Shown: piece by piece, positions 22,747 to 61,479 of the stretch
How the letters are laid out: every line of letters starts with the position of its first letter
How positions within the stretch are numbered: the stretch's first letter is position 1
Virus record (IMG/VR): IMGVR_UViG_3300031344_000002
Coordinates: 1-64,000 of that record
DNA length: 64,000 nucleotides
Strand: one strand, 5' to 3'
Notes under the pieces: generated by a model
What the model was told of the DNA's origin: nothing
The model's database searches: none
What the model saw: the letters and a program-made list of their open reading frames with translations, nothing else
Made by a program: the position numbers and the translations under genes

Positions 22747-23136
22747 TTATATATTGTTATTTTTTTCTTTTTTCTCAACTTCATCTGCAACGAATTTAAG
22801 TAATTCATTTCTTCTGTCAGTTGTTACTTCACCCTTTTCTTCTTCTCTACCACTTTTATTATTATTAAATTCACCAACCTTATTATCAAAAACAACTTCT
22901 TTTAGATAACGAAGTAGCATGATTTTTTGGTCTTGAATTTTTGATTCAGCTAAAATTAATTTTACAATTTGGTCACCAATTATTTGAATTTCACCGCTTT
23001 CTTTTACTTTAGTTTCCCATTTAGTAAAAAGTCTGGTGATTTTTGCCTTAGTGTTGTGGCTATCGTTGTAGCATTCTTGAAGTAGTTTATTTACACTTTC
23101 TTCATCAAATTTTAATTGTTTACGGGTTGGTCTCAT
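22747..23136 (-). CDS. Hypothetical protein
   Basis: First gene of the minus-strand operon; preceded by duplicated late-like motifs. Confidence 0.7.
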   Translation of the reverse strand: MRPTRKQLKFDEESVNKLLQECYNDSHNTKAKITRLFTKWETKVKESGEIQIIGDQIVKLILAESKIQDQKIMLLRYLKEVVFDNKVGEFNNNKSGREEEKGEVTTDRRNELLKFVADEVEKKEKNNNI

Positions 23137-23157
23137 ATGCTTTTATTGTTATTGTAC

Positions 23158-23195
23158 ATATAAATAGTTATTATTTATATAAATAGTTATTATTT
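23158..23195. repeat. Exact 19-bp tandem duplication
   Basis: ATATAAATAGTTATTATTT twice; each copy contains a minus-strand ACTATTTAT variant of the late motif. Confidence 0.85.
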
Positions 23196-23356
23196 ATAAA
23201 ATTGAACTATCATTTTTATAAAGAGTGCCGTAAAACCCATCGGTCTTTAGCCGATGGGATGTAAGGCACAAATTAGAATTATTTTTAAAAATATATTTCA
23301 TTATTATTTATATTAACTATTTTATTAAAATAAAATGAAAATAAATTTCAAAAAAC

Positions 23357-23387
23357 TTTGCGGATTGTAAAAATAAGTGTATCTTTA
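23357..23387 (+). promoter_or_regulatory. Bacteroidota-type promoter inside the element
   Basis: TTTG (23357-23360), 19 nt, then TATCTTTA (23380-23387): one mismatch to TAnnTTTG. Confidence 0.55.
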
Positions 23388-23393
23388 CAAAAT

Positions 23394-23537
23394 GATATGT
23401 TGTGTGTCAGGGACTGATTCGCAACTAAAACAAAAAACGGAGTAAGGCGTTACCATTAGGTGAGTCTATGACCTCCGAAGCCAATCCCATCGCCTTTGGC
23501 GTGGGTGGGTAGTTCACCTTTGTCGAAGTTCTTTGAA
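23394..23537 (+). ncRNA. Putative TnpB omegaRNA (reRNA)-like scaffold plus guide
   Basis: Translates, with one frameshift, to VSGTDSQLKQK/RSKALPLGESMTSEANPIAFGVGG*, a TnpB C-terminal tail pattern as recalled. Scaffold ends GGGTAGTTCAC at 23517; ends of the RNA are estimated. Confidence 0.6.
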
Positions 23538-23754
23538 GTATTGTTGGTTGGTGATTAATTGCTTTCACCATAAAACTTAAAGCAAAACGTAACACTGAAC
23601 AGTTACAAAGTAACTTTAAATAGTTACACAAATCAATTAATTTGATTTTAAAATTTAACATCGTTTGGGACAAACGATTACGGGCATCGAGCAAAAATAA
23701 GACTTCTAACTCCTTGGAGCAGTAAGCATAAGCGTTGAAATGTCTAAAATTCAT
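23425..23754 (-). CDS. Possible small cargo ORF reading into the internal right end
   Basis: AAATTATG start context like other genes here; last about 30 codons are the antisense of the IS end. Confidence 0.3.
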   Translation of the reverse strand: MNFRHFNAYAYCSKELEVLFLLDARNRLSQTMLNFKIKLIDLCNYLKLLCNCSVLRFALSFMVKAINHQPTILQRTSTKVNYPPTPKAMGLASEVIDSPNGNALLRFLF

Positions 23755-23816
23755 AATTTAATGTTTAAATTAAATGTTATTTTATGAAGCCCACAAGTCT
23801 TTAGCTTGTGGGTAGT

Positions 23817-24098
23817 TCACAACCATTCTATTTTATTGCTGGTTACAAAATAATGGGCATGATATGGTTTTTCTCCACTCCAATTACCAATTGAGGGTCT
23901 TAAAGTAATTTTATTATCATTTTTTGTTAATATCCATTCATTAATACCTAAAGGGGTGACCGATTTTTCACCACAACCACATGCGCATAAATGAATCGCA
24001 ATTTTAAATTTTTCAGAAATATAAATTATTCCATTTTTTAAATCTTCCGGAATTTCATCATAATATTCTGGTTTTATTTCAAATATTTTAATCATCAA
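23817..24098 (-). CDS. DUF6527-like Cys/His metal-binding protein
   Basis: G..YIS......AIHLCACGCG....TPL....W......TLRPSIGNW.....HAHYFV...IEW pattern; stop codon supplied by the IS right end. Confidence 0.75.
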   Translation of the reverse strand: MMIKIFEIKPEYYDEIPEDLKNGIIYISEKFKIAIHLCACGCGEKSVTPLGINEWILTKNDNKITLRPSIGNWSGEKPYHAHYFVTSNKIEWL

Positions 24099-24969
24099 AG
24101 AAATCAGTTTTTTCTAAAAAATATATTTCTTTAAATGGTTTAATACCAATTCTTATTTCTTTTGTAGATAATCCTGTTTGTTCTTTTAAATATAATAAAA
24201 TTTTATTTTTAGCAAATTTATTTGTGACTCTTTTATTATATTTTCCTTCTGGTGTATCTTCCATAAATAATACTTGCCAATTTTTTAATACATTAACTAT
24301 TGCATCGCCAACAATTTTTTCATTTTTTTTCATTATTGTATCATTATCAATTTTATCTTCAATTTTAAATATTACTGAATTTATTAATTTTTCAAGTTGA
24401 TGTTGGCTTTCTGTTTCAATTTCATAAATATATTCAGTATTTTGATTAATTTCATCAATATAATCATCAAAAGATAGATTAATTTTCTTTTCTGTATAAC
24501 TTTTTTTACCGTGGTCTTTATAATAGTTTCTAATTATTGTTTGGCAATAACTAAATGCTCTGGAATTAAATATTCTATAATTATGTTTATTATCTTCATC
24601 AATTAAAGATTTTAATTTTTCATTGGCATCTACAGCAAACCAAAACCTATAATTAACATCTAATTTAATCCATTTTTCAGAACCATTTTTATTACATTCA
24701 ATAATAAATGGTCTATATTTAATCATATGCTCAATTAAATGTGTAAGAGCATTCGATTCAACCTCCCTCATATCATAATTACCAATATGAATGGGATATC
24801 GCCTTAATATAGATTGTATCATTTTTTTAAAAGGTTCAATAAGAATTTCATTATAAATTTTATTTTTTTCTTCTAAAGAATTTGAATTTATATAATCTAT
24901 AACTGCTTGTTCTTCTCTTTCCGCAAAATACGGTACGCTAACTTCGAATTCGTTTTCATTTTCTTTCAT
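24088..24969 (-). CDS. Phage sigma factor (T4 gp55-like late sigma)
   Basis: YF..REEQAVIDY...IYNEIL..PF.KMI.SI.RRY...AFSYCQTIIRNYY region-2 pattern. Confidence 0.7.
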   Translation of the reverse strand: MKENENEFEVSVPYFAEREEQAVIDYINSNSLEEKNKIYNEILIEPFKKMIQSILRRYPIHIGNYDMREVESNALTHLIEHMIKYRPFIIECNKNGSEKWIKLDVNYRFWFAVDANEKLKSLIDEDNKHNYRIFNSRAFSYCQTIIRNYYKDHGKKSYTEKKINLSFDDYIDEINQNTEYIYEIETESQHQLEKLINSVIFKIEDKIDNDTIMKKNEKIVGDAIVNVLKNWQVLFMEDTPEGKYNKRVTNKFAKNKILLYLKEQTGLSTKEIRIGIKPFKEIYFLEKTDFFDD

Positions 24970-61391: not shown

Positions 61392-61479
61392 TGCGGTGTT
61401 GAGAAGTTGGTCATCTCGCCTGTTTCATAAGCAGGAGTCCCCAATAAGGTTTACGGTAGTTCGAATCTATCCACCGCTA
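61392..61479 (+). tRNA. tRNA-Met(CAT), initiator-like, with a long variable region
   Basis: Acceptor GCGGTG/CACCGC with a U1:U72 mismatch; D arm GAGA/TCTC; anticodon stem CCTGT/GCAGG with loop TTCATAA; T arm GGTAG-TTCGAAT-CTATC; no encoded CCA; TAATTTTG promoter upstream. Confidence 0.85.

What the first reader, a model, noticed from the sequence alone, without database searches (positions are those of the whole stretch)
23340..23540. Promoter-driven, protein-less TnpB omegaRNA-like cassette
Seen: a Bacteroidota-type promoter (TTTG-19 nt-TATCTTTA) sits directly upstream of about 120 nt. This stretch encodes only the last about 35 codons of a TnpB-like tail (with a frameshift) and ends in the right-end motif GGGTAGTTCAC at 23517. 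The rest of tnpB and all of tnpA are absent. Established: the TnpB omegaRNA scaffold overlaps the 3' end of tnpB and the right end, and the guide is the sequence just 3' of the right end. Inference: the deletion kept exactly promoter + scaffold + guide (CTTTGTCGAAGTTCTTTGAAG...). This would be a stand-alone guide-RNA gene used in trans by a TnpB or TldR protein encoded elsewhere.
Basis: partly seen in the sequence, partly recalled or inferred. Interest (0 to 1): 0.75.

Follow-up and report, generated by a model that had tools for sequence, protein, structure and literature searches.

The report
Gene-less transposon remnant carrying a guide RNA
The flagged stretch is a real, structurally intact TnpB guide-RNA (omegaRNA) unit left when an IS605-family transposon nested in a soil jumbo phage lost its nuclease gene; this kind of element is already described, and nothing shows that this copy is transcribed or used.

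Summary
Window 23392-23517 is a full-length TnpB omegaRNA scaffold. A covariance model built without it scores it 134 bits, with 36 of 38 pairs standard. The scaffold ends in the right end GGGTAGTTCAC, and TTTG-19 nt-TATCTTTA lies directly upstream.

- That promoter is the transposon's own tnpB promoter, joined to the scaffold by a deletion at an AAAAT microhomology.
- A matching left end with its TTTAT motif lies at 23215-23272, so 23220-23517 is a 298-nt gene-less mini-element of the PATE type.
- This unit is nested in an older gene-less element (23220-23820) whose own scaffold has decayed.
- The guide, preceded by TTTAT, matches natural alleles that lack the cassette. One is the same phage locus in a peat metagenome; the other is a related element in two other viral contigs.

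So the guide is ordinary transposon flank, not a re-aimed guide.

The 218-kb record (about 66% complete) holds no tnpA and one tnpB. That TnpB is only 46% identical to the cassette's cognate type and has a different scaffold sequence. No RNA data cover the locus.

Verdict: a new member of a known kind. Use in trans is plausible but unproven, and the idea is already published for such elements.

The parts
23215..23219 (+). TTTAT, the transposon-adjacent motif (TAM) just 5' of the left end
   Evidence: 18 of 20 left ends of relatives with readable flank have TTTAT at this distance. The cassette-free alleles read TTTAT immediately before the guide.
23220..23272 (+). Left end (LE). Outer stem GTGCC 23225-29 / GGCAC 23265-69; inner hairpin CCCATCGG 23236-43 / CCGATGGG 23251-58
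   Evidence: It is the only LE hit in the whole genome by nhmmer (23215-23276, 43.8 bits, E 2e-12). The inner hairpin is identical to the LE of L013 and L029, and the whole LE is identical to that of L058/L059.
23273..23304 (+). LE-proximal spacer, shared with the cassette-free allele
   Evidence: The X9 contig covers 23124-23304 and then jumps to 23518.
23305..23517 (+). The 'B' cassette: 213 nt that are present or absent among close relatives of this phage
   Evidence: In peat run X9, a 599-nt contig of the same locus has 28 other letters ending in TTTAT in place of these 213 nt.
23357..23387 (+). Predicted Bacteroidota-type promoter: -33 TTTG, 19-nt spacer, -7 TATCTTTA. It is the native tnpB promoter of the type-2 element
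   Evidence: Positions 23349-23393 are nearly identical to the region upstream of full-length type-2 tnpB genes in L048 and L043. The start site is inferred, not measured.
23389..23393 (+). AAAAT, the deletion junction (microhomology between the tnpB 5' leader and the tnpB 3' end)
   Evidence: In full-length relatives both the promoter side and the 3' side carry AAAAT at the breakpoints.
23392..23517 (+). Type-2 TnpB omegaRNA scaffold: stem 1 at 23399-23425, stem 2 at 23438-42/23473-77, inner helices at 23445-23467, stem 4 (also the RE hairpin) at 23480-23510, and tail AGTTCAC
   Evidence: Covariance model 134.1 bits, model positions 1-125. The MFE structure equals the consensus. Covariation in 15 of 18 pairs across 39 sequences. 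The 30-mer at 23452-23481 is identical in 20 viral contigs.
23518..23537 (+). Guide (first 16-20 nt 3' of the right end), CTTTGTCGAAGTTCTTTGAA
   Evidence: It is found directly after TTTAT in L058/L059 and in the X9 allele. The rest of the genome has no match with fewer than 3 mismatches.
23518..23696 (+). Non-coding 'cargo' of the older carrier element
   Evidence: Positions 23518-23628 are 94.6% identical to L058. There is no TnpB remnant, no Rfam hit, and the fold is unremarkable at z = -1.3.
23697..23820 (+). 'C': the AT-decayed type-1 omegaRNA scaffold and right end of the carrier element. RE hairpin at 23790-23812, GGGTAGTTCAC at 23810-23820
   Evidence: Covariance model only 22.9 bits. 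Compared with the intact L058 copy there are 15 GC-to-AT and 3 AT-to-GC changes, but the last 37 nt are 97% conserved.
23817..24098 (-). DUF6527 gene. Its stop codon (23817-23819) lies inside the right end of the carrier element
   Evidence: The gene is absent from all 79 related loci examined.

Best explanation
Window 23220-23517 is a 298-nt, internally deleted, non-autonomous IS200/IS605-family element of the PATE type. It consists of a left end, the element's own tnpB promoter, and the complete omegaRNA scaffold with the right end.

How it arose (inferred):
- A deletion of about 1.2 kb at an AAAAT microhomology removed the tnpB gene.
- This placed the predicted transcription start a few bases upstream of scaffold stem 1.
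- The unit sits inside an older gene-less element of the same family (23220-23820), in a hypervariable slot of a soil or rhizosphere jumbo phage.

How it would work:
- If transcribed, it yields a roughly 140-nt omegaRNA whose guide is the adjacent 16-20 nt.
- With a cognate 'type-2' TnpB supplied from another element (host IS copy, co-infecting phage, or the unassembled part of this phage), the complex would cut TTTAT followed by the guide sequence.
- That site is the allele of the carrier element that lacks the cassette. Repair from a cassette-bearing genome would then copy the cassette in. This is guide-only 'homing' that parasitises someone else's TnpB.

Shown here: homology, ends, promoter origin, RNA structure, the TTTAT motif, and the existence of the target allele.
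Inferred only: transcription, TnpB binding, cleavage and homing.
For: - Scaffold: 134.1 bits from a model built without it, and 36 of 38 pairs standard. The MFE structure equals the consensus, z = -3.0. Across 39 family members, 15 of 18 consensus pairs show compensatory changes, and B keeps them, for example CGGAG/CTCCG where the resident element has CATAG/CTATG.
- Protein remnant: the last 26 codons are 81% identical to the TnpB2 tail.
- Promoter: it is homologous to the upstream region of full-length type-2 tnpB genes.
- Left end: identical to the LE of L058/L059, and the only LE in the genome.
- Target allele: TTTAT followed by an exact guide match, in a peat-metagenome contig of the same phage locus (3 SNPs over about 590 nt) and in L058/L059.
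- Family status: full-length type-2 elements carry a Y1 tnpA (L043, L048, L054). A related LE+scaffold mini-element with one identical junction occurs next to two different flanks (L041/51/55 and L047), so such units move.
- The window's own copy is preceded by the right end rather than TTTAT, so it would not target itself.
- Published precedent: Meers et al. state that PATEs often encode omegaRNAs that would need TnpB in trans (PMC10055086).
Against: - No type-2 tnpB and no tnpA were found in the 218-kb record, which is about 66% complete.
- The resident TnpB is 46% identical to type 2, and its scaffold differs in the junction sequences.
- No RNA run holds this locus.
- Intactness may only reflect youth. 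A near-identical phage allele lacks the cassette, so the gain is recent. The neighbouring scaffold C has decayed, showing that such remnants are not necessarily maintained.
- B has one unique pair-breaking change (A at 23483) and one extra A in the linker.
- The exact promoter-scaffold junction was found at no other site in IMG/VR.
- The cassette has no left end of its own directly at the TTTAT it landed next to, so at least one further deletion or recombination must be assumed.
Confidence: 0.6

Rival explanations
1. It is an inert, recent deletion remnant. The cassette is exactly what is described above in origin, but it is not used. No cognate TnpB meets it, and it will decay toward AT-rich sequence like its neighbour C.
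For: - No cognate tnpB or tnpA in the record.
- Scaffold C, 300 nt away, has decayed with 15 GC-to-AT against 3 AT-to-GC changes and scores 22.9 bits.
- A cassette-free allele about 99% identical in its flanks shows the gain is recent, so intact helices need no selection.
- The bare promoter motif is not enriched in this phage.
Against: - The deletion left the native promoter placed so that the predicted start lies a few nt before stem 1.
- Two other independent gene-less derivatives also keep the whole scaffold: L041/L047, with a junction within about 5 nt of B's, and L042, about 25 nt further upstream. L039 lost half of stem 1.
- Type-2 TnpB genes 90-94% identical to L048's occur in contigs of Bacteroidota-labelled MAGs, so a partner may be common in the host range.
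- In the source sample, the unitig 23349-23439 spanning the junction has about 3 times the depth of the flanks, hinting at extra copies.
Confidence: 0.32
2. It is a domesticated stand-alone guide RNA gene. It serves the phage's resident TnpB (215 kb) or a nuclease-dead TldR-like protein, for example to regulate a gene or to attack competitors or the host at a site unrelated to transposition.
For: - The record encodes one apparently active TnpB with an intact RuvC triad.
- The two scaffold types share the four-helix architecture, GAAGCC, and nearly the same 3' end: GGGTAGTTCAC in B, AGGTAGTTCAC in the resident element.
Against: - The guide equals the flank at the insertion point, and its only known match is the cassette-free allele.
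- The genome has no other match with fewer than 3 mismatches.
- The resident TnpB is only 46% identical to the cognate type, and its own scaffold scores 50 bits on the type-2 model against 134 for B.
- No nuclease-dead homologue was found.
- The cassette is absent from a near-identical phage, so it is not a fixed part of the phage's biology.
Confidence: 0.06
3. It is not an omegaRNA at all. It would be a cluster of terminator or REP-like hairpins, or a chance GC-rich patch in an intergenic region.
For: - There are three similar hairpins within 600 nt.
- No Rfam family matches.
- The LE hairpin is followed by TTTT on the minus strand.
Against: There is end-to-end homology in both sequence and structure to the 3' ends of more than 30 tnpB genes, and to their left ends.
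Confidence: 0.01

Closest known systems
PATEs: gene-less IS200/IS605 derivatives that retain an omegaRNA (Dyall-Smith 2011, PMC3119063; Meers et al. 2023, PMC10055086)
   Same: - LE and RE hairpins with no protein gene.
- The omegaRNA scaffold overlaps the RE.
- The guide is the flank.
- TnpA and TnpB would both have to come in trans.
   Different: - Here the native tnpB promoter is fused directly to the scaffold.
- The unit is nested in another PATE-like element.
- The carrier is a jumbo phage rather than a bacterial or archaeal chromosome.
- Multi-copy status of this exact unit is not shown.
IS605-family tnpB elements with omegaRNA/reRNA, such as ISDra2 and the ISGst elements (Karvelis 2021, PMC8612924; Meers 2023)
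   Same: - The scaffold is encoded in the last roughly 120 nt of tnpB plus the RE.
- A 5-nt TAM lies 5' of the LE.
- The guide is immediately 3' of the RE, and the target is the empty site.
- The resident TnpB aligns to ISDra2 TnpB at E 1e-50.
   Different: - No tnpB in the unit.
- The TAM is TTTAT rather than TTGAT.
- The promoter is of Bacteroidota type.
TldR, nuclease-dead TnpB homologues with re-aimed guide RNAs (Wiegand et al., PMC10705468)
   Same: A guide RNA derived from a transposon right end, without an active transposon around it.
   Different: - No dead TnpB is present.
- The guide is not re-aimed.
- The LE and TAM are retained.
- Defining features were tested and not met.
Free-standing homing endonuclease genes of phages, and 'transposon non-restorative homing' (review PMC13565253)
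   Same: The predicted outcome is the same: the cassette-free allele in a co-infecting phage is cut and converted.
   Different: The cassette would supply only the RNA specificity, not the nuclease.

Membership tests
TnpB omegaRNA (reRNA) of IS200/IS605 | Derived from the 3' end of tnpB and ends at the transposon right end | tested here: met
   tblastn finds the last 26 codons at 81% identity to the TnpB2 tail. The RE 11-mer is shared with more than 30 tnpB 3' ends.
TnpB omegaRNA (reRNA) of IS200/IS605 | Conserved multi-helix secondary structure supported by covariation | tested here: met
   15 of 18 consensus pairs show compensatory changes in 39 sequences. B scores 134.1 bits on a model built without it, with 2 non-standard pairs of 38. 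Its MFE structure equals the consensus.
TnpB omegaRNA (reRNA) of IS200/IS605 | The guide is the 16-20 nt 3' of the RE, and it matches a TAM-flanked empty site | tested here: met
   TTTAT followed by an exact 21-nt match in L058/L059 and in the X9 allele of the same locus.
TnpB omegaRNA (reRNA) of IS200/IS605 | Transcribed and bound by a TnpB that it directs to cut DNA | not testable with these tools
   No RNA run holds the locus. One plant metatranscriptome library contains a relative's type-2 scaffold, and DNA carry-over is not excluded.
TnpB omegaRNA (reRNA) of IS200/IS605 | A cognate TnpB is available in the same genome | tested here: not met
   There is one tnpB in 218 kb, it is type 1, and it is 46% identical to type 2. 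The record is only about 66% complete, so absence is not proven.
PATE / non-autonomous IS200/IS605 element | Subterminal LE and RE hairpins of one family, with no protein gene between them | tested here: met
   LE at 23220-23272. The RE hairpin is stem 4. Only a spurious minus-strand ORF spans the unit, and it is not conserved in the cassette-free alleles.
PATE / non-autonomous IS200/IS605 element | Insertion immediately 3' of the TAM, without target duplication | tested here: met
   TTTAT lies at 23215-19 before the LE. The RE abuts the base that follows TTTAT in the cassette-free alleles. The left junction of the nested cassette itself has been lost, so a secondary deletion is inferred.
PATE / non-autonomous IS200/IS605 element | The same unit is found at several sites (mobility) | tested here: inconclusive
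   The exact junction occurs only at this locus in IMG/VR. The carrier element is found at another site and in the opposite orientation in L058/L059/L161. A related LE+scaffold unit sits next to two different flanks. There is a roughly 3-fold depth excess in the source sample.
TldR-type domesticated guide system | A nuclease-dead TnpB homologue paired with the guide | tested here: not met
   The only homologue keeps the IDLG, LEDL and DRDVNAA motifs aligned to active TnpBs.
TldR-type domesticated guide system | The guide is re-aimed at a site unrelated to the insertion point | tested here: not met
   The guide equals the flank, and the genome has no other match with 2 or fewer mismatches.
Bacteroidota housekeeping-sigma promoter (-33 TTTG / -7 TAnnTTTG, from my own knowledge of the consensus) | Both boxes present with 19-21 nt spacing, upstream of a transcript start | tested here: inconclusive
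   11 of 12 consensus positions match, with a 19-nt spacer. The region is homologous to the one upstream of tnpB2 genes. The motif is not enriched in the window, and the start site has not been measured.
Any Rfam family | A match at or near the gathering score | tested here: not met
   The window's only match at gathering score is a tRNA at 61392-61479. Nothing above noise falls in 22900-24100.

The most novel reading that the evidence does not exclude
The cassette is a selected, guide-only selfish gene of a jumbo phage. By keeping only a host-type promoter and an omegaRNA, it would borrow TnpB made by host IS copies or co-infecting phages. It would use that TnpB to cut sibling phage genomes lacking the cassette, so it spreads by homing and excludes competitors without paying for a nuclease gene. 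In effect it would be a hyperparasite of TnpB.
Probability: 0.15. Interest if true: 0.65.

Novelty: new member of a known kind. Interest (0 to 1): 0.38.

Why it matters
This locus is an unusually well-resolved natural example of how an RNA-guided transposon is stripped down to its guide. The deletion junction, the native promoter, both ends, the adjacent motif, and the natural target allele (cassette-free copies of the same phage locus) are all identifiable from sequence.

If the RNA is made and used, guide RNAs could persist and spread in phage populations as free-riders on other elements' nucleases. That is one plausible step toward guide arrays detached from their nuclease gene.

If it is not used, it remains a tidy case of recent transposon decay in an uncultured phage group, plus a ready-made TnpB/omegaRNA/TAM (TTTAT) set for testing.

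Tried and rejected
- Rfam, at gathering score and at E up to 10: no omegaRNA or other family at the locus.
- The resident TnpB as the cognate partner: rejected as the natural partner, because B's scaffold belongs to another subtype.
- L049 as an independent 'solo' omegaRNA: rejected. Its contig carries a full tnpB2 about 0.7 kb upstream, and a GIY-YIG endonuclease gene is inserted between tnpB and the rest of the scaffold.
- Remnants of tnpB in the 'cargo' 23518-23696: none. The cargo fold is unremarkable, and it occurs only in the same three contigs.
- Other targets of the guide: none in the genome with fewer than 3 mismatches. The metagenome scan returned only the source contig.
- An empty site for the carrier element (TTTAT followed by AACCATTC): not found, because the flanking DUF6527 gene is unique to this phage.
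- The same promoter-scaffold junction elsewhere in IMG/VR: only the twin contig L038.
- GenBank phages: no match to the cassette or to the neighbouring 293-aa protein.
- RNA evidence: no RNA run holds the locus. RNA-labelled runs hold only the conserved scaffold of relatives.
- Sigma-70 and terminator scans gave nothing specific for the + strand unit.

Full report
**Setting**

The window is the first 64 kb of a 218,381-bp IMG/VR virus record. CheckV puts it at about 66% complete, and its GC content is 26%. DNA runs from rhizosphere, peat, freshwater and permafrost metagenomes hold the sequence.

The finding lies in a 680-nt gap (23137-23816) between two minus-strand genes: a 129-aa ORF and a DUF6527 gene.

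This gap is part of a hypervariable slot.
- I examined 73 related viral loci that carry both the 293-aa neighbour gene and the 129-aa gene.
- In 23 of them the two genes are only 48-91 nt apart. In the rest the distance is 122-2005 nt.
- Here it is 951 nt.
- DUF6527 is absent from all of these relatives.

- TTTG (23357-60), a 19-nt spacer and TATCTTTA (23380-87) precede a stretch of 47% GC.
- 23432-23509 encodes 26 residues that are 81% identical to the C-terminus of a full-length TnpB. About 11 more residues lie in a shifted frame.
- The stretch ends in GGGTAGTTCAC at 23517.
- The same 11-mer, allowing one mismatch, occurs three more times as a transposon end in the genome:
  - at 23810-20 (copy 'C');
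  - at 163742-52;
  - at 216178-88, where it ends the genome's only tnpB (412 aa, with all three OrfB/TnpB Pfam domains).

**What the scaffold is**

I fetched 33 relatives of the resident TnpB from viral contigs. Their 3' ends show a conserved four-helix RNA that ends in GAAGCC, a hairpin, and GGGTAGTTCAC.

- RNAalifold on 39 sequences predicts 18 pairs, and 15 of them show compensatory changes.
- The flagged copy 'B' is not the subtype of the resident gene.
- Its 30-mer at 23452-23481 is identical in 20 other viral contigs. Seven of these carry a full-length tnpB of about 400 aa, which I call 'type 2' (L043, L045, L048, L053, L054, L056, L057); L049's contig also carries one about 0.7 kb upstream.
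- Type 2 is 46% identical to the resident 'type 1' protein.
- L043, L048 and L054 also carry a divergent Y1 tnpA, so type 2 is a bona fide IS605-like element.

A covariance model built from 12 type-2 relatives, without the window, gave these scores:

| Copy | Bits | Note |
|---|---|---|
| B (23392-23517) | 134.1 | E 1e-29, end to end, 2 non-standard pairs of 38 |
| 163-kb copy | 63 | |
| Resident tnpB 3' end | 50 | |
| C | 22.9 | |

On its own, B folds into exactly the consensus structure (-42.3 kcal/mol, z = -3.0). Stem 1 of B differs in sequence from most relatives but stays paired.

- The hairpin at 23220-23272 is the left end of this IS family.
  - Its inner hairpin is identical to the LE of L013 and L029.
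  - It is the only LE hit in the genome.
  - Like 18 of 20 relatives' left ends, it is preceded by TTTAT.
- The 'promoter' region 23349-23393 is nearly identical to the region upstream of full-length type-2 tnpB genes.
- In those genes the sequence continues into a leader of about 25 nt and the ATG. Here it continues, after a shared AAAAT, into the last 125 nt of the element.
- So one deletion at a 5-nt microhomology removed tnpB and fused its promoter to the scaffold.
- Therefore 23220-23517 is an LE-promoter-omegaRNA-RE unit of 298 nt.

**Nesting and the natural target**

The 21 nt after the right end were found in two other viral contigs, L058 and L059, directly preceded by TTTAT. There they lie inside an uninterrupted 428-nt gene-less element made of:
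- an LE identical to the window's;
- a type-1-like promoter;
- a 112-nt 'cargo' that is 94.6% identical to 23518-23628;
- an intact type-1 scaffold and RE.

That element sits in the same slot of a related phage, but at another position and in the opposite orientation (L161). So the whole of 23220-23820 is a copy of this carrier element, and B is nested in it.

Logan contigs laid on the region gave direct evidence of polymorphism.
- Peat run X9 has a 599-nt contig of the same phage locus, with 3 SNPs.
- In it, 23305-23517 is replaced by 28 letters ending in TTTAT, followed by the guide sequence.
- The TAM-plus-target that B's RNA would recognise therefore exists in close relatives of this phage.
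- The window's own copy is protected, because the right end, not TTTAT, precedes the target.

The 28 letters resemble the promoter of L058, so the cassette-free state is ancestral. The cassette's own left junction is gone, so a second deletion or an LE-LE recombination must be assumed. That step is inference.

**Is it used?**

Evidence for:
- The scaffold is intact.
- The predicted start site lies a few bases before stem 1.
- Two other independent gene-less derivatives also keep the whole scaffold. L041/L047 has its junction within about 5 nt of B's. L042 has its junction about 25 nt further upstream.
- One of them, the L041/L047 unit, occurs next to two different flanks, so it has moved.
- TnpB2 genes 90-94% identical to L048's occur in contigs of MAGs labelled Flavobacteriales, Sphingobacteriales and Bacteroidales. 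A 69%-identical copy sits in a 422-kb Cytophagales contig.
- In the source sample, the unitig spanning the junction has about 3 times the depth of its flanks.

Evidence against:
- No type-2 tnpB and no tnpA were found in the record.
- No RNA run holds the locus.
- The bare promoter motif is not enriched in the phage.
- The gain is recent, so intactness needs no selection.
- The neighbouring scaffold C has decayed with strong AT bias while keeping only its terminal hairpin.
- L039 lost half of stem 1.
- The resident TnpB has an intact RuvC triad, so it is a nuclease and not TldR. Whether it can use a type-2 scaffold cannot be judged from sequence.

**Comparison with the known**

Meers et al. 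found gene-less PATE-like IS200/IS605 elements. They wrote that PATEs often encode omegaRNAs that would have to be used in trans by TnpB from other elements (PMC10055086). A 2026 review lists transposon homing between co-infecting phages as a category (PMC13565253).

The finding is therefore a new member of a known kind. Its particular features are the promoter-scaffold fusion, the nesting, the phage setting, and the recovered target allele.

**Verdict**

- The TldR or domestication reading is not supported.
- Interest is moderate to low, at 0.38.

Noticed in passing
window 23697-23820: In copy C, the older element's scaffold has decayed (15 GC-to-AT against 3 AT-to-GC changes compared with L058). 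Its last 37 nt (RE hairpin plus GGGTAGTTCAC) remain 97% conserved and supply the stop codon of the DUF6527 gene. With TTTAT in place of the element, the protein would still end in the same residues (inferred).
   Followed up: partly
genome 163682-163752 (L003:1480-1550): A third gene-less RE/omegaRNA fragment lies between two + strand ORFs. It has type-1-like junction sequences, has lost stem 1, has one mismatch in stem 2, and has no LE or promoter.
   Followed up: partly
genome 214945-216188 (L001:592-1835): The resident full-length tnpB and its closest relatives (L005-L008) have no LE hairpin upstream and no tnpA. Only a conserved region of about 65 nt lies upstream. They may spread by recombination or homing rather than by TnpA.
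   Followed up: no
L049:4944-5793 / L143: A GIY-YIG homing-endonuclease gene is inserted between a type-2 tnpB (after stem 1 and the linker) and the rest of its omegaRNA scaffold. Stem 1 is duplicated and diverged, and the endonuclease ORF reads through the scaffold. In L040, a homing-endonuclease-like ORF replaces most of tnpB.
   Followed up: partly
window 23518-23628: A 112-nt non-coding 'cargo' is 94.6% conserved between this phage and L058/L059. Two GTAAC-N8-GTTAC hairpins lie at 23586-23627. No known family matches and the function is unknown.
   Followed up: partly
window 23159-23198: A 19-nt tandem duplication lies upstream of the 129-aa gene. The X9 allele has only one copy.
   Followed up: no
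window 23137-24098 and L145-L224: The slot between the 293-aa and 129-aa genes is a hotspot. The distance is 48-91 nt in 23 of 73 relatives and up to 2 kb in others. IS605-type remnants are also present in L161 (inverted), L175 and L197.
   Followed up: partly
window 23349-23439: In source-type run X1, the unitig covering the promoter, junction and stem 1 has depth 39, against 13-14 for the flanks. This suggests further copies or contexts of the same unit in that community.
   Followed up: no
window 23660-23678 (minus strand): A terminator-like hairpin followed by a T-rich tail lies inside the carrier element. It could end the minus-strand DUF6527 operon before it runs antisense into the cassette.
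   Followed up: no
L048:3226-3360: A third scaffold/RE type, also ending in GGTAGTTCAC, lies in the same contig as a complete type-2 element.
   Followed up: no
window 61392-61479: A tRNA gene; it is the only Rfam match in the window at gathering score.
   Followed up: no
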